Source of the DNA: Podarcis bocagei
Lineage: Eukaryota
Strand: one strand, 5' to 3'
Assembly: GCA_964188305.1 (NCBI GenBank)
Contig: OZ076896.1
Length of the DNA stretch: 64,000 bases
The notes beneath the pieces are model-generated. The model saw only the letters and a list, made by a program, of their open reading frames with translations. It ran no database searches and was not told the origin of the DNA. Positions 8,101 through 64,000 of the stretch are shown piece by piece. Each line of letters begins with the position of its first letter. Within the stretch, counting starts at the first letter, position 1. The position numbers and the translations under genes were made by a program.

Positions 8101-11100
8101 AAAGGAGTTCCTTCAATTGGAGTGTAATGATGGGGGGAATCAAATGCAAAGCTTCCTCTTGCACGCTCTTCATTATTTGGAAGTTTTTCATTGAAGTCCC
8201 TTGAGCTATTTTTAAGGTTTTGTTTCTTTGTCTCTTTGTTGTCTGTATAGGTTCTTTCACTACTAAAATTACTTTTTGGCTCTGTGGTTTTTCGTAAGCG
8301 TGCTCTATACTCATTACTTTGGGGTATGGGCTTTACTGGTGAAGTTGGTTTCTTTTTCTCAACTTCTAGCTGATTTTTGGCACCTACTGATGAGGATGTA
8401 GATGCCTGCTGGATTTGATCCATTATCTTTTTCACTCTGAAAGGTTTGTGACTTTTCCCTTTTGGCATAGCAGAATTAATGCATTCTGCAAGAATATCAT
8501 CACCTTCTTCTGCTTTGTCATCATCCAATGCAATAGTAGTCCCAGCTGACTTTCTCCCCCTCTGAGCATCATCAGTATTTCTGCCTTCTGTGGGAATGGT
8601 ATCTCTCTTTTCAAATTCTGCAGGTTCCATCAATGTACCAGTTGTCTCTGCATTAGCCAGTTCATTGGGTGGTGATTCTATTGTGAGATCACTCAGCGAT
8701 GTAGCCGTTGAGAAATTTATTGGCGTTCCCTCAACACAATACACGCGTGGCATATCATCTCCAGGTGTAAAACTAACATGTTTTTGAGAATGCAATCTGC
8801 TTTGGGAAGGGAGAAGTTTATACACAGGCAACTGGCTTGGCTTTCTGGCTACAGGTGGAGGTATTTTTGAAGCAGTTATCTGTGAAGGCTTTTTGGTTTT
8901 ACGTGAAGATTTTGTTGGCATAGCAGAAATAATACATTCCTCCAATATTTCGATATCATCTTCATCTGAATCATCCAGGATATCCTTTTCAGTCTCTGTG
9001 GGCTTCTCTGTCTTCTTCTCTTGATTATCCTTTGTGTCATTTGGCTGTTCAAGTTCCGATTCATTCCCATGGTCGTTTTCATGTACAGGAGGCATTATTC
9101 TCAACTCTACATCTTTCTGTATAAATGGTTCATCAAGACTCAATGCACTTAGGCTTGATGAGCAAGAAAATCCATCTGGTGTACTTTCTGTAGCAAAATG
9201 TAACAAAGTGTCTGCATCTTGCAATACCTGCACTCTTTGAACAGCTGTATTGACAGCTGTTTGCCTTGGCCCAGAATCTCTCTTTTCAGTGGTGGGTATT
9301 TTTGTTTTGACTGTTTCTCTCTTTACTTGGGTTGCTTGTGGAGGGGGTGGGGTTTTACTTCTGCTTGGTGGCATTGTTTGCCCAGGACTGTCTGGAAGAT
9401 CACTTGGGCTTATAATACCACTTACCATCCCACTACAAGGCTCGCTCTGAACAGAGCTAGCAATCGAACGGCTCTCAAAACTATCCAGGGAACTGACAGA
9501 GGTACACCTACTGAACATAAGTGGAGTCTCCTGCACATAATGTTCTGGTGGGCTCTTAGGAGTTTGCGCACCACTTTTTGAAGGAGATTTGGCACCCGAG
9601 GAAAATTCTACAGCTTTATGTCTTGCTGAATCAGAAGGAGATAGACTAGAAGCCTGAAGTCTATTTGATTTTGTTCTAATGTGTTGTGAGGCTGAAGAGG
9701 TTTCATTTACAGTACCTGCTGCAGACAGACTCCTATTTTCTTTCATCCCCGCTATCTTCAAAGAGTTGTCCGTATCTCCTGCCCGCGTGGATTGTTCACG
9801 TCCTGTTTCATCTTCAGCTGATGACAAAGATGACAGAGAGCTACATCTTGAAAAACAGATCGGTGTATCTTCTACACAATAGGTCTGTATTGTTTCCTGG
9901 TTGATGGAGGGTGCTTTGCAGGACGCAGACTTCTGGGTGTGACCGGCTCTACTTTGAGCAGAATTTGGATGAAGCTGGTTGTGTCTCTTTGAGCCAGCCG
10001 AGGTTGATGTATTCCCACTACTTGATGAAATATGATCCGTTTTAGTACTCTGTACTGAAGGGCTCTTTGAAAAAGAAAAAGATGGCTTCTGTGCGGAAGG
10101 AGGAACGTCTGTTGAATACTTGAGACTGTAATCAATAGGCTGATCTACATGGTGCTCTTCTTCATTGTATTTTATGCTATAATTAGTTGGATGATCTTCT
10201 TCCTCATGCTGTTCCTCCTCAGAGTAGCGCTCACTATAGTTAGTTGGCTTATCATCCTCATAATCATCAACTGGGCATATGGACTGGTTCGCTTTTGGAT
10301 TTATTCCGTGACTGCAGGTAACTCTGTTCTGTTCTGAACTATTAGATTCCCTTGATCTGAAAGGAGATACACACTCTGTCTGTCCAAAAGCTGACTGATA
10401 GTTCATGTGTTTATTATCACTACTCTCAGTGTATACAGGGTATGCTCCACTTTGGCTTCTGGACTGTCTTTGTTCATTCTGCTTTATTTCCTCTTCAATT
10501 ATGTGCTTAGGTCTTGCCCATCTTTCATTTTGTGATGGGCTTTGCCTTCCAGAATTCAATTGCTCATCAGAATATTTTAGGCTATAGTTTATTGGAGTAT
10601 CTAGCTCTCCATCATTGTCATCCATATGGTTAGCACTGTGTATTTTATGGGCTAAATCAGCAGGGTACTGTCCATAACTGCAAAATTTACTCTCTTCATC
10701 TTCAGAGTAAGATTCAATAGGCTTCATCTGTCCTCTTTTACCATACCCATCACTGCTACTGACACTATTTAAGCTATCATTAGAAGCTCTCTTATACTCC
10801 ACTTTTGCATAAGGCACAGGACATGTCCTGTTCTCAGATTTAGGGAAGTTGTAGGTATTTGTGTGAGAATGGGCAGCGGCTGTTCTTCTTAAAGCATTCC
10901 TATCTTCTGGCAAACAGTGCATTTCAGTTACAGATCCATTGCTTCTCTCTTCTTGTGGAATATGCATATTTACTTCTTCCATCACTTTGGAAATCTGGGC
11001 TGCAGCAGTGGAGATCTGCATTCCCATTCGTTTAGAGGAGCTCCCAGAATTTTCTGTTGCTGAATGGTAGCTGCTTAATCCCATTGCACGCTCTCTATCC

Positions 11101-26063: not shown

Positions 26064-26197
26064 NNNNNNNNNNNNNNNNNNNNNNNNNNNNNNNNNNNNN
26101 NNNNNNNNNNNNNNNNNNNNNNNNNNNNNNNNNNNNNNNNNNNNNNNNNNNNNNNNNNNNNNNNNNNNNNNNNNNNNNNNNNNNNNNNNNNNNNNNN
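26064..26197. other. Assembly gap (134 N) in intron 6
   Basis: Run of N. Confidence 1.
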
Positions 26198-32877: not shown

Positions 32878-32986
32878 GTTTTCAGTAAGAGGAAGACTAT
32901 CTATCCTCTTCGTCAGATTCTGAAGCTGAGCATAATACCAGTCTTTTTCTTTTCCCTCCTTTTCAAGCTCAGCTAGCAAGAGAGAC
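32878..32986 (-). CDS. APC: APC coding exon 4 (109 nt)
   Basis: ttatag|GTCTCTC...GAAAAC|gtaagt; SLLLAELEKEGKEKDWYYAQLQNLTKRIDSLPLTEN. Confidence 0.98.
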
Positions 32987-39656: not shown

Positions 39657-39791
39657 CTTCATATTGGATGCTTCTGTTTCCAGTTTTGTAAGATGATTTG
39701 AATTATCTTCCAGTTCTTGTCGAAGGTTTGAGTTCTCCATTTTTAATGCCTCTACTTGTTTTAACAGCTGATCATATGACACTGCAGCCAT
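39657..39791 (-). CDS. APC: APC coding exon 1 (135 nt coding; exon starts at 39809 with 18 nt of 5'UTR)
   Basis: ctgtag|GTCCTGGGGTAGCCCAGA-ATG; MAAVSYDQLLKQVEALKMENSNLRQELEDNSNHLTKLETEASNMK|gtataa; in-frame TAG 9 nt upstream of the ATG. Confidence 0.98.
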
Positions 39792-40129
39792 TCTGGGCTA
39801 CCCCAGGACCTACAGCAGAATAAAGAAGAAATATTTGTTTTGGTTCATTTGTCCCCCAAAATGTATTGTGAACTTTGAATGTTGACTTTTGAGAGAAATA
39901 ATTAGAACATGCTATTTCATTTCCCAGGTGAATATAGTATTTTTTGTATCTCGTGGAAGGTTTTTAAACTGATCATATAATCATATAAACCACGTTAAAC
40001 TTGGCTACCTTACTCACTTATTTTTAGACCTTAACAAGCTTTGTTTAGTGACATGAAAAATGCTTTCTACTAGGAAGTTCTAATTGAAGTCAATACAAAT
40101 TATAGGAGTTCTGCTGCTTTCCTAGCCTT

Positions 40130-40157
40130 TGCGCGCACGCGCGCGCACACACACACA
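40130..40157. repeat. (CG)n(CA)n alternating purine-pyrimidine tract
   Basis: tgcgcgcacgcgcgcgcacacacacaca. Confidence 0.85.
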
Positions 40158-41888
40158 GCAATACAAAATTACATTTTGATTGGTTCCAAATCATAATAAA
40201 TGCATTGCCACAAAGGTTAAGTAGTAAGTTGGATCTTGTTTTCAATGCTAAAGCCCAAATGCAGAGAACCTTGTGGCATGCGTTTCCTCATTGCCATTTG
40301 GTTTCCAGTTTACTGAAGCTCCCCAAACTGGATCACAATGCAATGCAGTGTGGGAGATTGCTAGTGTCAGGGACTGGCAGGGCTCCAAGCAGTGGGTGGG
40401 GCCAGAGGCTGACCCAGGAGAATGGGGTAGCTATTTATGGATTTTTGTGCTTCCTGCAAGACAGGAGCAGGAGCTAGAGGATGAGGAGGGGTCTGCACCA
40501 AGAGCTGAGGGAGAGACGTGCCTGAAGGGAGCTGGGGCAGAATCCCCGCCCCCACTGTCACTGGGATCAGGAGGGTCTTGAAGAGGCAGGCACAGTGACA
40601 ACTTCTGTGTAGAAGTTGCAGGTTGCTTACACTTGTGCTACCAGGCAAGAGTACTTAATCTTGGGTGTAGGTGTGGCCACCCATTACTCCAACAGTCCAG
40701 CTCAGAGCACAAGCCCAGGGAGGGGCACTAGCCACCTAGCCACCAGAAGTACGTGTGTGTGTGTGTGCGTGTTTAGTGTGCCTCATAAGCTCCTGTAAGT
40801 TCATGCTTTCTCAATACAGAATTAAACTACCACCTATTTGTCCTCCTTGGGCTGGGTGTGCTCAGGACAGCTAGTAGGCGCAGCGGAAAGAGTAAGAAGT
40901 CCCATTGCTGACCTCAGAAATGCCTAGAAGAATTATCACACTATTACGTCCGAAATTGTAGACATTAGTAAAGACGGAATATGATTTTAACAGGTTAGTT
41001 GTGCTGAACCATTTGCGTATGACCATGGGTTTATTAGGTTTCAATCAGCAAAGGACTCCCAGGGTTAATACTTAGTGAAGTAGAATCACGCAGAACCTTA
41101 CCTCCAGAAGAGCCTGTATGCTCCCCAAACCTCTTTAATTTAAAGCATCTTAAACAAGGCTGATCTTGAAGATAGCTCAGAAACTCCAGGCAATGCTCAA
41201 TGCCACCACTCATATCCAACCTGACGTGGCAAGGCTGGTACAAGGTCAGCCAGCTTTGGAACAACTGCACTGACTTTCCAGTTAACTCTGCACCCAATTC
41301 AAGGAGCTGGTATCAACTTCTAAAGCCTCTGAAGGATTGAGATCAGAGTATCTCAGAATCCACCTATTTTCATATGAGACCCACTGCTCTGGTCTGATCA
41401 CAAATTAACTATGGTTTACTGTTGCCCCTCCCCACTTCTCATTCATGCATGAGGAGTATGAAATGAAAGCTTCTTTCATTTCTCATTTATGTTCAAGCTC
41501 AGATAACTATGGTCTCTTCCAACTCTAGTTCATTTTTTAAAGTGTCTGATAGTATGATCTGCTGAGTGCCAGGTCCAGAAGAACCCCAAAACTCTGCTGT
41601 TCAAATAAGCAGATTGCAACCTAATATAACATCTTCCAAGCCAGTCACTGCCAGTGCCCCACCAGCATCACTTTGGACTTGTTTAGAGTCAGCTTCAGAA
41701 TGTTTGCCCTTACATCACCAGAACATCACCTCTAAGCAGCTGTTCTAAGCACAGTCAGCAGGTCCTGAACATTTGGTCACAGAATTGCAGAACATCCACA
41801 TACTGACATAAAAGGTAAAGGTAAAGGACCCCTGACAGTTAAGCCCATTCGCAGATGACTCTGGGGTTGCGGTGCTCATCTCGCTTTA

Positions 41889-42127
41889 CAGTGGTACCTC
41901 TGGTTACGTACTTAATTCATTCCGGAGGTCCATTCTTAACCTGAAACTGTTCTTAACCTGAAGCATCACTTTAACTAATGGGGCCTCCCACTGCTGCGCC
42001 GCCACCACGCGATTTCTGTTCTCATCCTGAAGCAAAGTTCTTAACCCAAGGTACTATTTCTGGGTTAGTGGAGTCTGTAACCTGAAGCGTATGTAACCTG
42101 AAGCGTATGTAACCCGAGGTACCACTG
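41889..42127. mobile_element. Tc1/mariner (pogo-like) MITE nested in the SINE
   Basis: TIR CAGTGGTACCTC, TA TSD, internal TAACCTGAAG repeats. Confidence 0.9.
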
Positions 42128-42409
42128 TACAGGCCAAGGGAGCCGGGGTTTTCCACAGTCAGTTTTTCCGGGTCATGTGGCCAGCATGACATTCTGGTGC
42201 AACGGGACACCGAAACCAGAGCAGCGCATGGAAACGCCATTTACCTTCCTGCTGGAGCGGTACCTATTTGTCTACTTGCACTTTTTGGCATGCTTTCGAA
42301 CTGCTAGGTTGGCAGGAGCTGGGACCGAGCAATGGGAGCTCACCCCGTTGTGGGGATTCGAACCGCCGACCTTCTGATCGGCAAGCCCAAGAGGCTCAGT
42401 GGTTTAGAC

Positions 42410-42894
42410 CAGTGTTTCCCAACCTTTTTTGGGCAAAGGCACACTTGTTTGATGAAAAAAATCTCGAGGCACACCACCATTACAGCCCCGTGACGTCAGC
42501 ACGCAGCGTCACGCCGGGAGGGACGCACGAAAGTGTAAGTTTCAATTTTTTTCCCTCCCCCTTGCCGGGGAACCTCCAAGCTTTGGGGGTGGGGGGGAGG
42601 ATGCAGCAAAGCGAGGCAGGAAGGAGAGCGCGGCTTGGCTGGGTGAGCTTTGGCAGGGGCAGGGAATGAGAGCCGCGAGGCGGGCGCTGCGGACGGAGGC
42701 GCTGCCCGCCGAGCTCGCAGGCAGCCAGGCAGGCAGACGGCAAGAGCCCCGCGCTGGGCGGCCTCTCCTCGCCGCCGCCGCCCCGCCTCTCGCCGCCCGA
42801 CTCGCCCGCCTCCCTCCAGGCAACATCTCGTGGCACACCAGGCAACATCTCGCGGCACACTAGTGTGCCGCGGAACAGTGATTGGGAAACACTG
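42410..42894. mobile_element. GC-rich non-autonomous hAT element nested in the SINE
   Basis: TIR CAGTGTTTCCCAA...TTGGGAAACACTG; perfect 8-bp TSD GTTTAGAC. Confidence 0.92.
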
Positions 42895-43612
42895 GTTTAG
42901 ACCACAGCACCACCTGCGTCCCTCTAATGCAAATGTGGGAAACCCTTTCAGCCCTAAGGTCCCAACTGCTAACATGAACCGTGGGTGGGGCCAGAGGCAA
43001 AAAGTGAGTGAATGTGACTCTTTCTACAGTATGCTACATATTTTCTACACTAATATCCACATTTTTCTGTCCACCATCCAGTCAAGGAAGGATTTATCAC
43101 CATTATCACCACCAACAATACATTTCAGCCAGGCAAAAGCACTTGAGGAGGGCATGGAGCAGGGTCAGTGAGAAGTAGGTGTGGCCTAATGAGAATACCA
43201 AGCTCCTAACAAGAGTCCTAGAGAGCCACATTTGGCCCCTGGACCGGAGGTTTCCCACTTCTACTCTACAGCTACAGTTGATCTTTCCAAGTGATTTAAC
43301 ATAACATAGATTGGAACGGACACAGAGCCTTGTGGAACACACCTCACAGCATCTTGCCCATATCTAAGCAGACTGTTTCTGAGCAGACTTAAGAGCAGGG
43401 AACTTTTTGGGTGGCCCTAGTGCAAAGCTATTGGAGGCTGCATTTAAATAGTGGGTGGGTCAGACATCACACTCCCTTTAACAAAGACACACAGAGATTT
43501 AATACAGGCTCTCCTTCAATCTCTCTCCCCCCTCACAGTTTTTTCTTCTCAGTGCACAGAGGAAACTCCACCAGCTGCTCTTCCTGGATAGCCTGTATGC
43601 TGCATTTCCTTG

Positions 43613-43614
<2 letters not shown>

Positions 43615-43643
<29 letters not shown>
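43615..43643. repeat. (CA)n microsatellite
   Basis: ~14 CA units. Confidence 0.9.
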
Positions 43644-43647
<4 letters not shown>

Positions 43648-45057
43648 CCTCTTACACAGTGCAAAAGATGAATCCATCAGGAATCTTTGGGAAATGCTGG
43701 AGCAACTCTTCTTTTTGCTGTGGCACAGCTGATTCCCAAACAGCTGAGCAATGGAAGGGGGACCCACAGGGAGACTTTTAACCTCCCCTCCCCTGCCCGC
43801 CACTGTTATCACCCACTGATCATTTGTTCAGGTAAAGCCGAGTGACAGCAAAGGGGGAACTGCTTCCCTTGCCTTTAGGATGGGGAGTTGGGGAGGGCAT
43901 TGACCAGGACCTTGGTAGGCTGGAGGATACCAACTGCTTCTATAAGAAAAGAAATGACTGGGGAACTAGCCCTGAAATCCCAACAAAAATGTGATTTTAA
44001 CGAATTGTATGGTCCAAACTGCTGGAAAATTTCGGAACAATATTGTATTATCAATCATGAGATGAGGCTCATCCATGAGGGCCTACAAATCTATAATTAG
44101 GTCACAAGTCAGACTGAAGCAGGCTGATGAGGTGTGTTACCAAGAATCAATCAATCAATCTCTCTCTCAATCTCTGCCTCTGTCTCTCTCTCTGTGTGTA
44201 AAACATACTTTCCCTAAAAAGAGTGTGTTGGACACAGGCGTAAATCTATAGTTATATTCGCCTTGCACAAAGATGGGTAGATTCATCACTGCATCCCTTA
44301 ATCAAGGCAGTACCATGCCCCCTCCACTGTAGCATTCACATAACTGGACAGAAACCTGTCAAGTTACTTCCATTTGTTTGTTTGTTTTCATCTATGAGTG
44401 GCAAGAGCTGCTTTCACAATGCCAAGTATCAGCCAATATTCTCAAGGGGGAAACAAACTGAGCTACAAAAGGAACCTGGGGAAAGAATGACAGGTGGGAA
44501 GAGAGACAGCAGTTCTCCTTGGCTGAAGTTGAAGTGTGGTTGAATATTTCACTGGCAATATTTTGTTAAAATGTCTCTAGAAGGGATGAGTGGAGGAGGA
44601 AGACTGCAGAAAGGTGAAGACTGAGAGTATGGGGAACACAGAAAACCATGCAAGCCAAGGGCAATCCAGCCTAAGGCTATGACATAGGATTGGGTATAAT
44701 ACAAATTGTAAATAAAGCAATCAATCTTAATCATAAACTCTGGCACAAAGGATATTCTAGATTCAACCAACCCTCTACTAATACCAAGCAAATTAAACCT
44801 GTTAAAATATTGTATAGACAAGACTTAAGTAAGGAAATGAATGAAAGAAGCAGCAATACAAGCAAATGTTTATGCAAACCAGGCCAGCTTTAACAAATTC
44901 TGCTGTTCTCACATTCGCAATTCCCCCATCGATTCATTGCCTTGCCATTATGCAGTGTCAGCTCATGAGTAACAGAAGGAGATATCACACAAAGTGTGAA
45001 GCAAAACACAGCTATAACCTCAACCTGAAGATTTGGGAAAGGAACCAAAAGTCTCAA

Positions 45058-45380
45058 GTCTTCTTTTCTGAAGATCACTCGTAGCCAAGCAGGATTGTCT
45101 TCCATGAACACGGTCTTAATGGTGAGTCCGTAGGTGACTGTGGAGGCCAATTCTGGATCCACACATCCTTCCACAGTGGGGACATAGGTTTCCGGGTGGG
45201 AGTTGATCATGGTGAAGGTTTGCTAAACCTGCCTTCCTCTTAGCACGTTTCTCCCTTTCATCCTGAGTTTGTGCGTCTTCAAAGTCCACAACACCTTTGG
45301 TAAAGGCTGTTCTCCAAATGGAGTGCTCACAGGCCAGTGTTTCCCAATTGTTGGTGTTTATACTACATTTTTTTAGATCA
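45058..45380 (-). mobile_element. RTE-clade LINE 3' fragment
   Basis: Translates to NWETLACEHSIWRTAFTKGVVDFE...CPHCGRMCGSRIGLHSHLRTHH-stop (RTE C-terminal C2H2 finger), then a (GAA)-like tail. Confidence 0.85.
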
Positions 45381-45754
45381 AAATTCTCAGTATTGCTTTA
45401 CTAGCTCCATAGTTGGTTTAATCAAAATATATTTAACAAATTAGGGATGCAACCTGTAAGAATTCTACTAACAAGAACAGATATCATCCTTTTGATTGTA
45501 TTTTGGATGGTAACTGGTGAATTTCATAAATCATTGTTATTATGTTATTTTTTTTAAAAAGCAAACAAACTATCAGCTAAATGTTGGTGTTCTGTATTCT
45601 CTCACAAGAGAACAGCTAGATATTGCACAAGAATACACTATAACGTAATGAATGAGAGCAAGTTCTTTTTTAAATGAGATGCTGTGTTCATGGGGTATCC
45701 ATAATTTATTGAATTTTGTTTAGCCATGTAAGCCATAATTTTTCAATGCCAGTA

Positions 45755-45995
45755 CAGTCAAACCTTGGTTGTTGAACGTAATCCGTTCCAGAAGCACATT
45801 TGGCTTCCAAAATGTTCGACAACCGAGGTGCAGCTTCTGACTGGTTGCAGGAGCTTCCTGCACTCAAGTGAAAGCTGCGTCGGACATTCAGTTTCCAAAA
45901 AACGTTTGAAAACTGGAGCATTTACTTCCAGGTTTTTGGCATTCGGGAGCCAAAACGTACCAAAACGGAGGCGTTTGGGATCCGAGGTTTGGCTG
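45755..45995. mobile_element. Tc1/mariner (Tigger-like) MITE
   Basis: TA-CAGTCAAACCTTGG...CCGAGGTTTGGCTG-TA. Confidence 0.82.
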
Positions 45996-46344
45996 TACTA
46001 GCATTATTAGAACATTCCAGCATGGTTAACACTTATCATAAATTTCTTCAGACTGTTTAAAAAACTCAGACGGAACAGCTGTCCCCAATACCATTAGGTT
46101 TTACCCTTGTTTGCACTTTTGCCATGTTAAAGTTCTGAGACCTTGCAAGCAGTGAATACACTGAAAGTATCAGACTGAAGTCCACAACAGATAAATCATA
46201 TTGGACTTGTCAATTATACCACAGCGAAGACCTCAGGTTAACAAAACTATGAATAAAACAAAACCACTTTACTGTACATATTTCTCTAGCCATATGGCCA
46301 CGCCCCTGTTCCTTGACCAACACAACATCCACTGTCCAACAATA

Positions 46345-46437
46345 TTCCCATGATATCTGCCCACTGGTCCTGCTAGCTAGGGATGATAGGAGTTGTAATC
46401 CAAAAACAACTGGAGACCCAAGTTTGAGAAACACTGA
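46345..46437. mobile_element. Half copy of the palindromic hAT MITE
   Basis: GGAGTTGTAATCCAAAAACAACTGGAGACCCAAGTTTGAGAAACACTG. Confidence 0.65.
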
Positions 46438-47030
46438 TCTAATCTCTTTTGCTTCAGGGCTCACCCACTGTTAGCATATGGCTCCTGGGAGACTGAAGGA
46501 ATATGGCCATTGGACAAAAAAATCTTCCCCATGCCTCTGATCTAGATAACCTGATGGGATCCAACTGCTGCTACATCCCTACTTCTCCTTTGGGAGCAGG
46601 ATCTGCTGTCTCTTGCTTTGCTCATGGGAAAAAGAATGCATCCAGAGGGAGAGCAGCCCTAACCCGCTGCTGCATTGTGCAATGAGGGAACATCGTGTAT
46701 GCAAAGGATTCTGCAGGGTCTCATTTCTCACAATTATCCCATGACTGACAGTGTCTCGCTGGGCAGCATCCGTACACAAGTCGGTTATTTCTCAGAAGCG
46801 CACAATAGGTGCTTCATTAGCTCTCTCTGCCTCTCTCTCACACATTGAATTCTACAATATTTGGTTTTAAAGCTAATTTAAAGGGGTTCTCAAATGTTGC
46901 TTCAGCGAGTGCACATGTCAAGCAAAGGAAGTAAACTTCTTTGAACATAGTTATGAAAAACATAAAGCCACTATGAGCTATTCAGACACCTGTGAAATGA
47001 GTTTGGAGAAGAGATGGGCTTGTCAGAGCA

Positions 47031-47122
47031 TATTATATTATATTATATTATATTATATTATATTATATTATATTATATTATATTATATTATATTATATTA
47101 ATATTATATTATTTATATTATT
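47031..47122. repeat. (TATAT)n pentanucleotide microsatellite at the L2 3' end
   Basis: tattatattatattata... array. Confidence 0.9.
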
Positions 47123-48287
47123 TATAAAATTTGTATACCACCCTTTATTCGAAGACCACAGGGCGCTTTGCAACATAAAAATTCAAAATACGTAATAAAA
47201 CAAAAGCAAAAGCAAACACAAACCAATACCCCCAAACACATTTAAAAGCCCATAGAATCAGCCAAAGACTTGACACCTGTATGAAGGCACCAGGCGAGTC
47301 TCCCTGGGGAGAGCATTCCACAAATGGGAAGTCACCACAAAAAAGGCCTGTTCTCATGCCACCACCCTCCAGACCTCTCATGGAGGAGGTATGTGCAAAA
47401 GGGCCTCAGATGAAGATTGCAGAGTCTGGGTAGGTTCAGATGGAGACAGGAGGTCCTTGAGGTATTGCGGTCTTGAGCCGGTTAAGGCTTTATAGGTCAA
47501 AACTATAGGTCATCACTTTGAATTGGGCCCAGAAACTAATCGGCAGCCAGTGCAGTTGGACCCGGATCAGTAAAATATGTTCAAACTGTCTTACCCCAGT
47601 GAGCAACCTGGCCACCAAATTCTGCACTAGATGAAGTTTCTGAACTTCAAAGGAAGCCCTATGTTCAACACATTGCAGTAATGTGACCTAGGTTACCACA
47701 GCATAGACGACAGACGTTAGGCTATCCCTGTTCAGACAGGGCGGCAGCTGACTCACCAGATGATGAAAGACACTCTATGCTATTGAAGCCACCTGAGCCT
47801 CAAACAACAGGAGAGGATCCAGAAATACCCACGAACTATGGACCTGCTCCTTCAGAGGGAGTGTAACCCCATCAAGAGCTGGCAACCTCCCATCCATCTG
47901 GTATAGGGAACCGCCCACTAACAGTGCCTCAGTCTTATTTGGATTGAGCTTCAGTTTACTGGCTCTCTTCCAGTCCATTACCAAGGCAAGACAGTGGCCC
48001 AGCACATCCACTGCCACACCTACAGATGTAAAGGAGAAGCAGAGCTGTGTGCCATCAGTATATTGCTGAGAAGGTACTCCGAAACTCTTGATAACCCTAA
48101 TCAGTGGTTTCATGTAAGATGTTAAAACACCATAGGTGATAAAAGTGAACCACACACTGAAGGCTCCACAGGGCCAAAGAGCACTCTCCAAGCAGCACCC
48201 TCTGGAAACAGCCATCCAAGTAGAACCGGAACCACTGCAAAACAGTGCCACCTACCCCTGACTCAGACAGCTGCTGCAGAAGGATAC
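47123..48287 (-). mobile_element. L2-clade LINE fragment (degenerate RT C-half and 3' end)
   Basis: Minus frames give QWFRFYL, YTDGTQL (YADDTQL-like), LKLNPNKTE, LHWLPISF. Confidence 0.85.
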
Positions 48288-48423
48288 TATGGTCTCCCAA
48301 ACTTGGGTCTCCAGTTGTTTTGGGACTACAACTCCCATCATCCCTGACCACCAGGACCAGTGGGCAAGGATGATTGGAATTATAGTACAAAAACAGCTGG
48401 AGACCCAAGTCTAGGAAACCCTG
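48288..48423. mobile_element. Palindromic hAT MITE
   Basis: CCCAAACTTGGGTCTCCAGTTGTTTTGGGACTACAA...AAAACAGCTGGAGACCCAAGTCTAGGAAACCCTG. Confidence 0.8.
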
Positions 48424-50847
48424 ATTGAAAAAATCAGTTTCCTTCAAGAGCACCTGGCTCTGGTCCACAACCAGATCAACACCATGCAGTACTGTCTTAA
48501 TCAAGAAACACAAAGTGGGACAGTTATGCACATGATTCAGGAAAGAGTTCTAAGCACTTCTATTTCCCATTTAAAAGGCATGGATCACTTATTGGAAAAC
48601 AAGTAATTGTATTAAATAAGACTTATCATTACAAATAACATCACTTCAGAATTACAAGTGATCCAACATAGTGACCTTCACATGTCAAACAACAGGAAAC
48701 AGTTTATATTTAGAAGGCTCATCAGCACTTATTCTGCATAGTATCCAGCCTGCCACCATATAGAAATCTGTTTCAACAATAAATTGATTTATCTCTTCCA
48801 GATTGGATCCTTTAATAATGGCAGAATGGTAAACTAATACCCATCACAAAGACTTATAAAAAATGTTATATTTTTGTATATTGAAAACACATCATAAATT
48901 CTCTGTCATATCCACCATTACTAGACAATTGAAATTTGCTGCACCAGCTTATTATGTAGGCTCCAACTTTATGGAGTATACAGAGTATAACTGAATCCTT
49001 GTGCCATTTTAAAGAGAAGATTCTCTGCACATACCCAGTTTAAAGTAATAATGGAAGAACAATCCAAAGGAGCCTCTGCACTACCACTGCTGTCCAAGAT
49101 TTTTGTCTTCTTCTCCTAGCACCTATAGTTATTTAATGGGACTAATAATTCTACAAGAAGAACCTTAAGCTTGATCTTCTAATCACATACTCATTTTAAT
49201 TAGTGATTATTCATGTCCTTATGTCTGAATTGTTAAGAAAATATTTAATGGAATGCATCTCTCATGTGGGCTCCCATCATGATTACTTATACTGTTCGAT
49301 ATAGCTGATCTGAAATTGAATATATTTATATAAATTTTAAGGAAGTCTAAGTATTCACAGGCCTATTACTCTAAATAATAGATCTGAAATGTATAGTCCA
49401 CTAATGAAACTGATGACTTCACTAAAAAATGTACATACTAAGTAGAAAATGGCATTCTTGCTATATATAATTTTTGAATCCACATTATCTTTATCAGCCA
49501 GCAAGAACAATAATTGATATAGTTTGAAATGTGGCAAAGCAGAATATTGAAGTGTACAGTAATTTAAAAACAATTGCCATAAATGCTAAAATATTGTTTT
49601 AGCATTTGGGAGCACCAAGTAAATACAACACACAATCATTCAAGAATTTTTGGGCTGATCCACAAAAAAAGCAAATCATCCCAAAAGTACTACCTTCGAC
49701 CTATACTGCTGAAAATGATTTGATAATTTATTATACTTTAATCATTGTTCTGCTAGATTACTTCTAATTCTGCTGATGCTCAAATAAAATAGCCATTTTT
49801 CCTCCACAGTGATGCATCAAAGCTGACCTAATTATTACATTTAAAACTGCATCTGACGAGAAAAAAGAAAGAAAAGGGCACTACTTCATACATAATTTAT
49901 TAAGATTACTAATAGTATCCAAGACTGAATAACTCTCAGAATCTCTTATGGTGATGATGAACAGATCAAGTCAAAAGCTTCGGGCAGATGACAAATACTG
50001 GTCTTTCCCTTTCCCTTTCATCTTTATATTTTAACATTTCGGAATTTGCTTTTGTAGGGATGGCAATTGCTCTATTGCATTCCTGGGTGCAGCAGTGCAG
50101 CAGAACCTCTCGTCTCTATGCAGCTTTCCCCCTTTCAGTAAAGGAGCAAAAGCTGCTGCAGTAAACCGCAGAAATGCCAGCAACACATCATGTCACTAAC
50201 AAAGGCACTGGGATTTCACAGCATTTCCAGCAGGGAGTCTTCATGGCTCTGCAATATTATGCAGGCCATCCAAAAGCAAATCTTAACATTTCAAAATTAC
50301 AATAATCCATTCTCTACAATACCTTCCTCATCCTCCCCCTCCAGCCCTTGCATTGTGGGGTTGTTAGATTCAAATCAAGGCATCTCCTCTGCTGCTTTGT
50401 GTCCCTTTCTCTGGCTGCTGCTACTGTGACAGGAGGGAGGAGGAGAAGGAGAAGGGAGGATTTCAATGGGCTCAGCTCATTCCTCTAAGCGATGAATGTT
50501 TCATTCTTTGTTGCCCTTTATCCGTCTCCTAAGATACTATTTTCTCCTTGTTTCTATGTCAAACCTTTAGAACAACCATTTTTGTGCTACAAAAGCGTCC
50601 TTTTTCTATCGCTTCCAAAGCTCGCCATTGCAATATCCTCTCGTTCTGTCAAAAGCATGGATCGGAATCCTAGGACTTGATTCCTAGTTCTTTCTGTAAA
50701 AGCTAAGAAGCGAATGCATGGACAGAGAACCAGGCTACCTTTCCTGACAAATGTCATTCACTAGCCAGATGGGACAATGCTGTCCTTACAGTCACCAATA
50801 CTCAGTGCTCATTTCCAACAGAAGTACAACACTAACATTTCACCTAC

Positions 50848-50990
50848 CCCATCTCCGACGCCGACCGCACCTCCATTCAGTCTTCAACACCCAGTACCTT
50901 CCTGTATTCACTGTCTGCGCTAAAGCCAGAGCCAATACAGCCACATTCCAGTCACGTGTTCACCCAGCCCAACCCAGCCAATGGCCCTGA
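50848..50990 (-). promoter_or_regulatory. APC: APC promoter/exon 1A orthologue
   Basis: Minus strand ATTGGCTGGGT...CACGTGAC...ATGTGGCTGTATTGG...GAATGGAGGTGC...ATGGG|gtaggtg. CCAAT at 50978-50982 and 50932-50936, E-box at 50953-50958, donor at 50848. Matches my recollection of human 1A architecture. Confidence 0.85.
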
Positions 50991-53044
50991 TCACATCAGA
51001 GAATATAACATAGTCTTATTCACATCCACTGCTTTCTTTTCTCTGATCCACCCCAGCTCTTGTCAATTTGTTGTCTGGACAATCTAGCAGAAGGGAAGGG
51101 AGGGGTAACTTGTCAATGAGAGCAGGAAAGGACAACCACCTTTACTGAGCAGAGAGGGAATACAGAAAGTGGAATGGGGTCAGGGGGAGAACAGAGAAAG
51201 AGAGACATGCCCAAAATCAATTTCTCTTATTCTCGTTTAACTGAACAATTTCTCTTTGTGTGATGACTGGCTTTTCTGCCCTCAATGCCAAGTGATTCAT
51301 CAAGACTAATATGTATATGTTAACAGTATTGATAACATATACCCTTGATTGAAGCCATGGAAAATAATCAGTTCACATCATAGCAGAGAGGGCTAATTTA
51401 ATTCAGATCCATTTCCATTACTGATCATTAGGAGCTGTCTAGTCCATTTCAATTCAAACTGCAAGATTCTGCTTTAGGGTAGAGCATTAAACAAGATGAC
51501 CTTCAAGTCCCATCCAGACCTCAAAGTCTATGTCCCTAGTGGTAACATGCTTAAAAACAGAGGGGAGGCGTTCAGCAGGAAAGCCACGTCCATTGCAAAA
51601 GCATTTTCATTCCAAATTTCAGCTATAGTTTACAACTGATAATATATACATATAATACTTAGGATTTAACAAAAGAACACTTTATATAGCCTATCCAAAG
51701 AAGACTTCACAGAAGCTAAGTTGGTTTTCCACCCAAACAACTTGCATACTAACATTTTTATAACAATTAAGAAAATTACTTTGCAAAGGATGCTGCCTGC
51801 TGTATTCGCACAATAGCCACAACACATGCCTCAATGCATAATGTGTGCATATGCACACAAGAAAAATGAAAGTAATGTGGATCATGACATAGGGAGCTTA
51901 AGGCTGCAATCCCAAACACACATGGGAGTTAAGAGGGACTTACTTCTGAGTAAACATGCATAGGATTGCTGTGCCAGTCTTAACTGATGATTAAATTTGA
52001 GACAGAAATTATGAATGTAATAGGAAGGCAGTTATTGTTAACAAATATATCTGGAGAACCATTTGTTAGAGAGAAGCAGTGATTAATGCCAGCAACACAT
52101 CCTGCTTCCTGTCTGAATAGGCAGTAGGTTACTGTTACATACTACTTTTACATTCAAAAATCATGCAAGTATCCAAAATATGTGAAGTTCTCTGCAATTC
52201 AGGTTACTTAAATAATTTGTTTTCGTATTATTATGCCAATCTACACTACCAACCCCCATCTTATTGAATATTTAAAACTGTCTGAGCAAACGAAGAGTCA
52301 CTATACTAACAAAAGGCTCTGGACATTTCCCCAAGTTCAGAAAGGAAATCTGTAGACTAGTTTGTTTCCCCCAGAATGTTACCTCATAGGATAAGAGGTA
52401 AATTTAGGGCCGGATGTTCTCCAGTACTGCTTCCTTAGTCTCAGGCAGCTTTCACGTATACAATCTACTTTAGCTGATACTGCTAATTACTGCAAGAGTG
52501 AAAATATGAACAATTACTAGTTTTGGTAATAGCAAAACCTAAACAGGTTATTAACTGACATATTGAACACGGGACATAAGAATATGTTGTGTCTCCTGAT
52601 TCTGTCCACTGATATGTATCTAACCCAGATAATTTGTGAATAACTATGGGGACAGTCACTTAGAAAGTGTGAATATCCTTCCTGTTTGAACCTGACACAC
52701 TGACAATATAATCAGTAATGCCATTTGAATATGAGCATTAAAATAATCTGGAGATATTAGCTTCAGGGACTGAGCTAGAATTTGACCCATAATAATTATG
52801 CTGCAAGGAATGGATACATTCCTGAATACCCAAGTTGCGTCCTGAAAATGTGCAGGGGTTTGTTTTTGCACCACAGGGGCTCAATGCCAATCTAGTCCAA
52901 AGTGCACATAATAAACAGATGCTAGCATCATTCGCATAGATCCTGATTTCCTATTAACCACTCCCATGTTTCTGGGCTGTTTCCCAGGGCCTGGGTCTCG
53001 ATGTCTGCCCTCTGCCATTGGAAAGACGTGAGAAATAGTTACTA

Positions 53045-63399: not shown

Positions 63400-64000
63400 G
63401 GCAATGGTGCCTGCTGCCCCGTGGAGTGGGGGGGGGGAGGCGGAACGACCCTCAAAGACCCCAGATCCCCGACCTGCTTTGACTGGCAAGGCTGCCTCGA
63501 GCTCAGGCGAGGAGGAGGAGGAAGAAAGGCATCGAAGCCGGTGTACTGACTCTGGCCAGGTGTGCTGCTTGCTGCCGCCGCCTCAACTCACCTGCCCGCC
63601 TCTTCGCCCTCCGCACCCAGCAGCAGCAGCGCCGCCGCAGCCGCCCCTCCCGGGACTCCGCCGCTGCCTCCGTCGCGGCCGGCGCTCGGGGGACTCGGCC
63701 CCACCACGAAGCTGGGAGGCGGCCGCCCACACATCCGGGGCGCGGGGGAAGGCCGTGGGGGGACACGCTCCCCTTCCTCACAGGCGGCGGCGGCAGCAGC
63801 AGGCGAGAGGGGAGCTGGTCCCCCTGCCGCCGCCCCGACTTCTCATCCCCGAGAAGGCGGCTCCCCTCCACTCGCGCCTCGGTCGGTGTCGGTGTCGGTG
63901 CCGGCCCGCCTGCGGCCTCTGCCCTCGCCACACTGGTAACCTGCTGCCCGTCACCGCCCCCCTCACTCCAACTTCCCGGCCAGCCTCCCCGCCGCCATCT
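63400..64000 (-). promoter_or_regulatory. APC: CpG island with APC promoter/exon 1B orthologue (donor CAG|GTGAGT at 63592; possible second donor CAG|GTTACC at 63941)
   Basis: Very GC- and CpG-rich; consensus donor in APC orientation; YY1 motif AGATGGCGGC at 64000-63991; GC boxes. Confidence 0.8.

What the first reader, a model, noticed from the sequence alone, without database searches (positions are those of the whole stretch)
39761..50876. Overlapping uORF that runs across the APC start codon and is entered from both first exons
Seen: exon 1A has two in-frame ATGs (50876 and the GAGATGG just before the donor, strong Kozak) and ends in phase 2. Splicing to 39809 gives MEVRSASEMGSWGSPEWLQCHMISC-stop, which overlaps the main ATG out of frame and ends at TAA 39763-39761. 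The 1B exon ATG at 63734 is open for 143 nt to its donor, also phase 2, so it enters the same frame. From memory, human 1A gives MEVLPDSEMGSKGSQGWLQLHMISC-stop with the same ATG positions, length and phase. Inference: an amniote-conserved translational brake on a dosage-sensitive tumour suppressor. The same phase-2 ATGs would be in frame if spliced directly to coding exon 4.
Basis: partly seen in the sequence, partly recalled or inferred. Interest (0 to 1): 0.8.

Follow-up and report, generated by a model that had tools for sequence, protein, structure and literature searches.

The report
Conserved overlapping uORF in APC leader
The promoter-1A leader of the APC tumour-suppressor gene carries a short upstream reading frame that starts 23 bases before the APC start codon and runs across it; that start is shared by this reptile, a bird-like genome, mouse and human, so it probably damps APC translation, though no expression data here show it in use.

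Summary
On the minus strand, a putative APC exon 1A (ATGs at 50876 and 50852, last base 50848, phase 2) joined to the first coding exon (39809) gives a 25-codon ORF. It crosses the APC ATG (39791) out of frame and stops at TAA 39763-39761. The 1B ATG at 63734 and the in-frame fit to coding exon 4 also hold arithmetically.

Within this window the ATG count is unremarkable. The support comes from other species. A bird-like contig (L024) has a 1A-like exon ending ...GCCATGGG|GTGAGT. Published human and mouse primers cross the junction ...AATGGG|GTCCAAGGGTA. So a strong-context uATG at -23 is shared by four amniote lineages. All 11 first-coding-exon sources have an 18-nt leader, an open +2 frame and a stop ending at +31, but that stop is largely forced by APC's Leu-Lys codons.

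The upstream ATG (-47) is kept as a triplet, but in L024 it lies in a different frame. Entry from exon 1B is not conserved: in mammalian 1B mRNAs the long uORF is in frame and stops 6 nt before the ATG.

No RNA evidence shows exon 1A use, its start site or the junction in this species. The translational brake remains an inference. I found no paper describing it. I class it as a new member of a known kind.

The parts
50848..50876 (-). 5' part of the overlapping uORF in putative exon 1A. uATG1 is at 50876-50874 (-47 in the spliced leader, adequate context). uATG2 is at 50852-50850 (-23, strong context). The last exon base is 50848 and the donor GT is at 50847-50846.
   Evidence: Homologous 1A-like exon in L024. 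Published human and mouse primers contain the same ATG motifs.
39761..39809 (-). 3' part of the uORF in the first coding exon: 18-nt leader 39809-39792 with an in-frame TAG at 39800-39798, APC start codon 39791-39789, and uORF stop TAA 39763-39761 (ends at +31).
39657..39809 (-). First coding exon of APC (153 nt, codons 1-45). Met18 at 39740-39738 is the first AUG downstream of the uORF stop (20 nt after it, strong context).
   Evidence: Pfam APC_N_CC, E=1.5e-25.
50920..50946 (-). Further upstream 8-codon ORF (MWLYWLWL*, -117). It lies in the mRNA only if the transcription start is upstream of 50946. It sits inside the box ATGTGGCTGTATTGG.
   Evidence: sequence.
50953..50984 (-). Promoter-1A-like core: inverted CCAAT box (CCATTGG, 50984-50978) and E-box CACGTG (50958-50953), 77-108 nt upstream of uATG1.
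   Evidence: Sequence. Their function as promoter elements rests on my recollection of the human APC 1A promoter literature and was not tested.
63592..64000 (-). Putative exon 1B (GC-rich, donor CAG|GTGAGT after 63592). It has uATGs at 63998 (11 codons), 63846 (22 codons, in frame with APC) and 63734 (weak context, phase 2, giving a 63-codon overlapping ORF if spliced to 39809).
   Evidence: No RNA evidence. No significant DNA similarity to mammalian 1B contigs.
32878..32986 (-). Coding exon 4 (109 nt). Its first base is codon position 3, so any phase-2 donor joins it in frame.
   Evidence: (Pfam Suppressor_APC).

Best explanation
This is the 5' end of the APC gene of a squamate-like reptile. 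Its promoter-1A first exon ends with an AUG in strong context, 5 nt before the splice donor. After splicing to the first coding exon, whose leader is 18 nt in every source sampled, this AUG lies 23 nt upstream of the APC AUG in the +2 frame. It opens a 17-codon ORF, or 25 codons from the second AUG at -47. The ORF runs across the APC start codon and ends 31 nt into the coding sequence.

By the scanning model, ribosomes that start at -47 or -23 cannot start at the APC AUG. Full-length APC from 1A transcripts would then depend on leaky scanning. Ribosomes that finish the short ORF could at best reinitiate downstream, with Met18 only 20 nt after the stop. Termination more than 100 nt upstream of the next exon junction could also expose the mRNA to nonsense-mediated decay.

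Shown: the ORF is in the sequence, the -23 uATG and its geometry are conserved in four amniote lineages, and the uATGs are present in human and mouse cDNA. Inferred: that exon 1A is used in this species, that the uATGs are recognised, and that recognition lowers APC output.
For: - Sequence and frames.
- Bird-like L024: a 1A-like exon lies 11.4 kb upstream of the first coding exon and 0.7 kb upstream of the only conserved intronic block. It reads ...GGGATGGAGGCGCGG...GCCATGGG|GTGAGT. The uATG at -23 sits in a perfect GCCATGG context and opens the same frame (MGAEGSPGWPQLHMISC*).
- Composition: L024's exon is 80% G+C. It has three ATGs in 70 nt where 0.35 are expected (P=0.002). An ATG at donor-5 has P=0.0026 by composition.
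- Human junction primer ACTCGGAAATGGGGTCCAAGGGTA (PMC4676129) and mouse CGAAAATGGGGTCCAAGGGTA (PMC9059100) place the same ATG 5 nt before the 1A/exon-2 junction in reference mRNAs.
- Human and mouse forward primers ...AGACAGAATGGAGGTGCTGC show that uATG1 with ATGGAGGTGC, identical to the window, is in amplified cDNA. In mammals at least, some transcripts therefore start upstream of both uATGs.
- The 18-nt leader, the open +2 frame and the stop ending at +31 hold in 11 of 11 sources.
- General rule: vertebrate uORFs are depleted within about 100 nt of the CDS and usually have poor contexts. Repression rises with a good context and with proximity to the CDS (PMC4890304). A conserved strong-context uATG at -23 therefore runs against the genome-wide trend.
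Against: - No RNA evidence in this species. Two bulk RNA-seq runs (12% of each read) gave 0 reads on 50600-51300.
- The only contigs there (X1, X2) are short, of unknown library type and unspliced. They run 7-12 nt past the proposed donor.
- RNA-like runs of the same organism hold the first coding exon completely, and one of them holds none of the 1A words.
- All mammalian full-length contigs retrieved were 1B-type. 1A may therefore be a minor promoter.
- Within the window the ATG count is not unusual.
- The stop position and much of the ORF are by-products of APC coding constraint.
- uATG1's frame differs in L024.
- No ribosome-profiling evidence was available, and the ORF was not found in the held supplement text of a 7,264-ORF catalogue paper (files may be truncated).
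- The conserved 7-mers ATGGAGG and ATGGGGT could be DNA or RNA elements rather than start codons.
Confidence: 0.58

Rival explanations
1. The conserved ATG-containing heptamers are DNA- or RNA-level elements: promoter-proximal transcription-factor sites (for example YY1-like ATGG cores) or splice-donor context. Their ability to open an ORF is incidental and has little effect on APC translation.
For: They lie within about 130 bp of the CCAAT and E-box core. Conservation extends beyond the triplet (ATGGAGG, ATGGGGT). AGATGGGG resembles the AAGATGGCG motif seen at the 1B start in the window and in murid contigs. uATG1's frame is not kept in L024.
Against: In L024 the flanks have drifted to CGG-rich sequence while both ATGs remain. 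The YY1-like flanks and orientation are not conserved (GAGATGGGG against GCCATGGGG). Positions -5 to -3 of a donor are barely part of the splice consensus. The G at +4 and the purine at -3 are kept, as expected for start codons. A strong-context AUG present in the mRNA will be read by scanning ribosomes whatever else it does.
Confidence: 0.2
2. Exon 1A is little used or unused in this species, or the uATGs are a tolerated neutral feature. APC output is then set by promoter 1B and by other leader features, and the uORF has no meaningful role here.
For: There were 0 RNA-seq reads on the 1A region. One RNA-like run has the first coding exon but no 1A words. Every mammalian full-length contig found was 1B-type. 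About half of vertebrate mRNAs carry uORFs with modest average effect.
Against: Retention of the -23 uATG in four lineages separated by about 300 million years (my estimate of divergence), including an 80% G+C background. RT-PCR primers sitting on the uATGs are used routinely on human and mouse cDNA. The two short contigs centre on the 1A region in two separate studies.
Confidence: 0.17
3. The uORF encodes a functional micropeptide that is conserved for its own sake.
For: A weak shared pattern M-G-x-x-G-S-x-x-W-(L/P)-Q-x-H-M-I-S-C is seen across lineages.
Against: The shared residues map to nucleotides constrained for other reasons: the GGTAG of the leader and the APC codons. The free positions vary (SWGSPEW, AEGSPGW, SKGSQGW). 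The residues upstream of -23 are not conserved and shift frame in L024.
Confidence: 0.03

Closest known systems
Overlapping upstream ORFs (uoORFs or oORFs) as cis-acting translational repressors in vertebrate mRNAs
   Same: An AUG in the 5' leader, out of frame with the main ORF, terminating inside the main ORF. It has a strong Kozak context and lies close to the CDS, the two features that raise repressiveness (PMC4890304). The peptide sequence is poorly conserved while the start codon and geometry are conserved.
   Different: Translation and repression are not demonstrated here. The ORF is split by an 11-kb intron, with the key AUG only 5 nt from the exon junction. It exists only in transcripts from one of two promoters.
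Human and mouse APC exon 1A leader (reference mRNAs from promoter 1A)
   Same: ATGGAGGTGC and ...ATGGG|GTCC... motifs, an 18-nt leader of the form GTCC..GGGTAGCC..G. followed by ATG, and the same frame and stop (published primers; murid and laurasiatherian contigs).
   Different: Residues between and after the uATGs differ. The spacing between the two human uATGs could not be fixed with tools: 47 nt from memory, while the amplicon size printed in PMC1131894 would imply 68 nt, which is the same frame. I found no paper that names or tests this uORF.
Mammalian APC exon 1B leader uORFs
   Same: Several uATGs lie upstream of the same APC AUG, so APC mRNAs from both promoters carry upstream ORFs.
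   Different: In laurasiatherian and murid 1B mRNA contigs the uORFs do not overlap the APC AUG. The 58-codon one at -183 is in frame and ends at the leader TAG, 6 nt before the AUG. The window's 1B ATG at -161 is in the overlapping frame but in a weak context, and it has no counterpart in those mammals.
Downstream or internal initiation in APC (attenuated-FAP alleles reinitiating at codon 184; from my own knowledge of Heppner Goss et al. 2002, not read here)
   Same: APC translation can restart downstream after an early stop. The uoORF stop lies 20 nt before Met18.
   Different: That phenomenon follows mutant premature stops within the APC frame, not a natural leader ORF. No evidence here for use of Met18.

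Membership tests
APC gene 5' end (orthologue of human APC) | The first coding exon encodes the N-terminal coiled-coil dimerisation domain | tested here: met
   Pfam APC_N_CC E=1.5e-25 on 39657-39791(-). 98% identical to vertebrate APC exon ORFs.
APC gene 5' end (orthologue of human APC) | Downstream exons of 85, 202 and 109 nt with APC sequence and phases | tested here: met
   Exons at 36723-36639, 36105-35904 and 32986-32878. Pfam Suppressor_APC on exon 4.
Overlapping uORF (uoORF) | An AUG in the mature 5' leader, upstream of and out of frame with the main AUG, with its stop inside the main ORF | tested here: inconclusive
   True for the predicted 1A-to-exon-2 mRNA. True for human and mouse mRNAs as far as the printed primers reach, which is the -23 AUG and the junction. 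The mature mRNA of this species was not observed.
Overlapping uORF (uoORF) | The transcription start lies upstream of the uAUG | tested here: inconclusive
   No reads in this species. In human and mouse, forward RT-PCR primers begin 6-9 nt upstream of uATG1.
Overlapping uORF (uoORF) | Ribosomes initiate at the uAUG (footprints or reporter evidence) | not testable with these tools
   No ribosome-profiling tool was available. A supplement search of one ORF-catalogue paper found nothing.
Conserved regulatory uORF | Start codon and geometry retained in distant species beyond chance | tested here: met
   The -23 uATG is present in the window, L024, human and mouse. P=0.0026 by composition in L024. 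The 18-nt leader is present in 11 of 11 sources. Sampling is only four lineages.
Conserved regulatory uORF | Mutation of the uAUG raises main-ORF output | not testable with these tools
   This is a bench experiment.
   L004, L010 and L014 1B leaders have uATGs at -367/-368, -257/-264 and -183. None overlaps the APC AUG.

The most novel reading that the evidence does not exclude
Promoter choice sets the APC proteoform, not just its amount. On 1A transcripts most ribosomes would translate the conserved overlapping uORF, terminate at +31 and reinitiate at Met18, or the phase-2 uATGs would be joined in frame to coding exon 4. Either route would yield APC with a truncated or missing N-terminal dimerisation coil. 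1B transcripts would give full-length APC.
Probability: 0.07. Interest if true: 0.75.

Novelty: new member of a known kind. Interest (0 to 1): 0.45.

Why it matters
APC dosage governs Wnt signalling and polyposis risk. Promoter 1A and 1B lesions are known causes of disease, yet the 1A leader is treated as plain untranslated sequence. If the strong-context upstream AUG at -23 is conserved for some 300 million years and gates the APC start codon, two things follow. Transcripts from the two promoters would differ in protein yield. Germline or somatic variants that destroy, create or reframe these uATGs, at about c.-23 and c.-47 of the 1A transcript, would deserve functional interpretation. It would also give a simple, testable handle for raising APC output from the intact allele. 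The concept itself, repression by an overlapping uORF, is well established, so this would be a useful new example and not a new principle.

Tried and rejected
- RNA in this species: read laying on 50600-51300 gave 0 reads in two bulk RNA-seq runs and only two short unspliced contigs of unknown library type. The run searches only show that RNA-like runs hold the first coding exon.
- Exon 1A orthologues through proteins: an antisense 79-aa ORF over exon 1A found no relatives. The Falco 'APC-like' protein P0034 is not on record. Upstream flanks of L001, L005 and L007 do not reach or do not contain a 1A-like exon. Success came only from chaining through a neighbouring ORF to L024.
- Two metagenome pattern scans anchored on the promoter box found nothing.
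- All ten murid full-length mRNA contigs were 1B-type, so no mammalian 1A contig was obtained. Mammalian evidence rests on published primer sequences.
- Literature: five searches for a described APC uORF found none. Rohlin 2011 does not discuss leader ORFs. Neither the remembered human peptide nor 'APC' was found in the held supplement text of PMC10032668 (files may be cut). EMBO J 2016 (Johnstone et al.) is not held.
- PMC1131894 prints a 180-bp amplicon, whereas a 47-nt uATG1-to-ATG spacing predicts 159 bp. I did not use it either way. A 'chicken' primer identical to the mammalian sequence does not match the bird-like L024 and was disregarded.
- Rfam found no family in the window.
- Human material: I did not fetch contigs for P0012, P0028, P0059 or P0062 (named as human or likely human). 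L009, L010 and L014-L023 looked human-like in the coding exon but belong to a murid protein cluster. No contig that I took for human was saved or compared. The N run 26064-26197 was left as it is.
Full report
**What is in the window**

The minus strand carries the 5' part of an APC gene. The first coding exon is 39809-39657 (153 nt). It encodes MAAVSYDQLLKQVEALKMENSNLRQELEDNSNHLTKLETEASNMK and matches Pfam APC_N_CC at E=1.5e-25. Coding exons of 85, 202 and 109 nt follow at 36723-36639, 36105-35904 and 32986-32878.

The exon peptides are nearly identical to a snake-type APC fragment (P0133: MAAVSYDQ......KLRPKISMRSYGS...). They are less like bird fragments (...KLRPKVSVRSYGS...). Whole-genome runs of the organism total about 1.26 Gb of contigs. 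I therefore take the genome for a squamate. Another note of this scan calls it squamate too; that is a lead, not evidence.

**Check of the observation**

- Putative exon 1A reads ...gactgaATGGAGGTGCGGTCGGCGTCGGAGATGGG|gtaggt. The ATGs are at 50876 and 50852, in one frame. The last exon base is 50848, in phase 2.
- Joined to 39809, the ORF is MEVRSASEMGSWGSPEWLQCHMISC*. It crosses the APC ATG (39791) out of frame and ends at TAA 39763-39761, which is 31 nt after the A of the APC ATG.
- Contexts: -47 is adequate (T at -3, G at +4). -23 is strong (G at -3, G at +4). The APC ATG is strong.
- If the intron is retained, the ORF stops at once (ATG GGG TAG).
- The 1B ATG at 63734 is open for 143 nt to CAG|GTGAGT (phase 2). 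It would give a 63-codon overlapping ORF, but its context is weak and two other uORFs precede it.
- Coding exon 4 starts at codon position 3, so a 1A-to-exon-4 join is in frame.

None of this is unusual on its own. The ATG count in the exon matches composition shuffles (P = 0.29-0.42), and a GC-rich 143-nt stretch is easily open.

**RNA evidence in this species**

None was obtained.
- Two bulk RNA-seq runs of the same species label, each read to 12%, put no read on 50600-51300.
- Two Logan contigs of unknown library type, from two studies, cover 50836-51013 and 50841-51001. They run 7-12 nt past the proposed donor, so they are unspliced.
- Runs whose contig totals look like transcriptomes hold the first coding exon completely. 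One of them (X21) held none of the 1A words.

Use of exon 1A, its start site and the 50848-to-39809 junction are therefore predictions.

**The downstream half of the ORF in other species**

Exon ORFs and mRNA contigs from other vertebrates were fetched through the 45-residue exon product. In all 11 sources:
- the leader between the acceptor and the ATG is exactly 18 nt;
- it contains GGTAG, which gives a TAG in the APC frame at -9 to -7;
- the +2 frame is open;
- the +2 frame stops at +31.

The sources are the window, an unidentified distant vertebrate (L001), a laurasiatherian mRNA (L004), murid mRNAs (L009, L014; taxa from cluster names), bird-like genomic and RNA contigs (L005, L007, L011, L012, L024) and a gull copy (L013).

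The common stop is not independent evidence. APC codons Leu10-Lys11 (YTR AAR) create TAA or TGA in the +2 frame with four of the six Leu codons. L001 uses CTG AAG and stops at the same place with TGA.

**Exon 1A in other species**

One non-squamate sauropsid could be reached. L024 is a 13.1-kb contig of the species of L007.
- It holds a 1A-like exon 11.4 kb upstream of the first coding exon. The exon lies 0.7 kb upstream of the only intronic block that aligns with the window; the distance in the window is 0.94 kb.
- It reads ...ggcgggATGGAGGCGCGGCGGCCGCGGCCATGGG|gtgagt.
- The ATG 5 nt before the donor is conserved, in a perfect GCCATGG context. With the 18-nt leader it sits at -23 and opens the same frame (MGAEGSPGWPQLHMISC*).
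- The upstream ATGGAGG is also conserved. A 1-nt deletion puts it at -46, in the third frame. From there it still overlaps the APC ATG and stops at +20.
- The exon is 80% G+C. Three ATGs in 70 nt compare with 0.35 expected (P=0.002). An ATG exactly at donor-5 has P=0.0026.

**Mammals**

No 1A contig could be obtained, because every full-length contig was 1B-type. Published primers designed on the reference mRNAs settle the key point.

| Source | Primer | Paper, call |
|---|---|---|
| Human, forward | ACTCGGAAATGGGGTCCAAGGGTA | PMC4676129, |
| Mouse, forward | CGAAAATGGGGTCCAAGGGTA | PMC9059100, |
| Human, leader | GTCCAAGGGTAGCCAAGGATG | PMC5717399, |
| Human, genomic | CTTATAGGTCCAAGGGTAGCCAAG | PMC12247696, |
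| Human, 'exon 1A' forward | GGAGACAGAATGGAGGTGC | PMC5080933, |
| Human, forward | GAGACAGAATGGAGGTGCTGC | PMC1131894, |
| Human and mouse, forward | AGACAGAATGGAGGTGCTGC | PMC13061793 (mouse), PMC12774965 (human and mouse), |

- The first two primers cross the 1A/exon-2 junction, with ATGGG as the last five bases of exon 1A.
- The third and fourth fix the human 18-nt leader and its acceptor.
- The last three show that uATG1, with the same ATGGAGGTGC as the window, lies inside amplified cDNA.

The -23 uATG is therefore shared by a squamate, a bird-like sauropsid, mouse and human. In mammals at least some transcripts start upstream of both uATGs. The spacing of the two human uATGs was not verified. 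It is 47 nt from memory, while the 180-bp amplicon printed in PMC1131894 would imply 68 nt, which gives the same frame.

**Exon 1B**

- In the laurasiatherian and murid 1B mRNA contigs the uATGs lie at -367/-368, -257/-264 and -183.
- The -183 ORF (58 codons) is in frame with APC and ends at the leader TAG, 6 nt before the ATG.
- None overlaps the APC ATG.
- The window's 1B region shows no significant DNA similarity to those contigs.

**How it most likely works**

By the scanning model (established knowledge), a 43S complex entering a 1A transcript meets an adequate AUG at -47 and a strong one at -23 before the APC AUG. Ribosomes that start at either read through the APC AUG and stop at +31. 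Full-length APC then depends on leaky scanning.

After termination the next AUG is Met18, only 20 nt downstream, where reinitiation should be inefficient. The stop lies 104 nt upstream of the next exon junction, so nonsense-mediated decay is a possible second effect.

Genome-wide, vertebrate uORFs are depleted within about 100 nt of the CDS. They tend to have poor contexts, repress 15-30% on average, and repress more with a good context and short distance (PMC4890304). A conserved strong-context uATG at -23 is therefore the kind expected to matter.

Shown: sequence, geometry, conservation, and presence in mammalian cDNA. Inferred: recognition by ribosomes, repression, and use of 1A in this reptile.

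**Rivals**

- The heptamers could be promoter-proximal or splicing elements. The changed flanks in L024, the retained -3 and +4 positions and the frame-type invariance of the leader argue against this being the whole story.
- The exon may be little used here. The missing RNA evidence and the dominance of 1B contigs leave this open.
- A functional peptide is unlikely. The free residues vary, and the shared ones map to nucleotides constrained for other reasons.

**Comparison with what is known, and novelty**

This works like an overlapping uORF, a well-known class of cis repressor. Five full-text searches found no paper that names or tests an APC uORF. A catalogue paper's held supplements do not list it (possibly truncated), and large Ribo-seq tables elsewhere may. 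I class it as a new member of a known kind, of moderate interest. It gives a concrete, conserved target for interpreting 1A-leader variants and for testing promoter-specific APC translation, but it adds no new principle and its function is untested.

Noticed in passing
window 39792-39809 (-); the same place in L001, L004, L005, L007, L009, L011-L014, L024: The leader of the first coding exon is exactly 18 nt in all 11 vertebrate sources. It always contains GGTAG, a stop in the APC frame at -9 to -7. In mammals this TAG terminates the long in-frame 1B uORF, so it may be kept to block N-terminal extension of APC.
   Followed up: partly
L004:152-328, L010:208-384, L014:201-377: Mammalian 1B-type APC mRNAs carry a 58-codon uORF starting at -183 (MY...ASVWQVQG*). 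It is in frame with APC, has the same length in a laurasiatherian and two murids, and ends 6 nt before the APC ATG. If spliced past the first coding exon it would be an alternative N-terminus.
   Followed up: partly
L013:1599-1748 (-) and 9990-10139 (+) (Larus michahellis NC_133929.1): There are two inverted copies of the APC first coding exon, with arms 99.9% identical over at least 1.35 kb and about 8.2 kb apart. One heads a 2826-aa APC gene, the other an annotated 88-aa 'APC-like' gene. The exon copy is unusually diverged (84% to the window). A similar 'APC-like' protein exists in Falco (P0034). This is possibly a sex-chromosome palindrome.
   Followed up: partly
window 63963-64000 (-); L010:18-34, L014:10-26: An AAGATGGCG (YY1-type) motif sits at the window edge in putative exon 1B. 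In murids it lies 13-23 nt from the 5' ends of 1B mRNA contigs, so its ATG is inside the mRNA and opens a 6-codon uORF (11 codons in the window).
   Followed up: partly
window 50920-50946 (-): An 8-codon ORF (MWLYWLWL*) lies inside the box ATGTGGCTGTATTGG, downstream of an inverted CCAAT box (50984-50978) and an E-box CACGTG (50958-50953). Whether it is in the mRNA depends on the unknown start site.
   Followed up: no
L004:470-560; L009:459-548; L011:497-590: mRNA contigs show frame-breaking alternative splicing just after the start. Coding exon 3 is skipped in a laurasiatherian, and extra exons are inserted after coding exon 1 in a murid and in a bird-like species. Each leaves a short N-terminal ORF and a long downstream ORF.
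   Followed up: no
window 50836-51013: Two runs from two different studies each hold a single short contig with nearly the same ends (50836-51013 and 50841-51001), centred on the 1A promoter and exon. This could be a promoter-associated signal such as open chromatin or short unspliced RNA, or a coincidence.
   Followed up: partly
window 49824-49907 (-); L005:429-511; L024:738-820: This is the only block of the 11-kb first intron that aligns between the window and the bird-like contigs (77-78% over 87 nt). It is a candidate conserved intronic element about 0.7-0.9 kb downstream of exon 1A.
   Followed up: no
   Followed up: no
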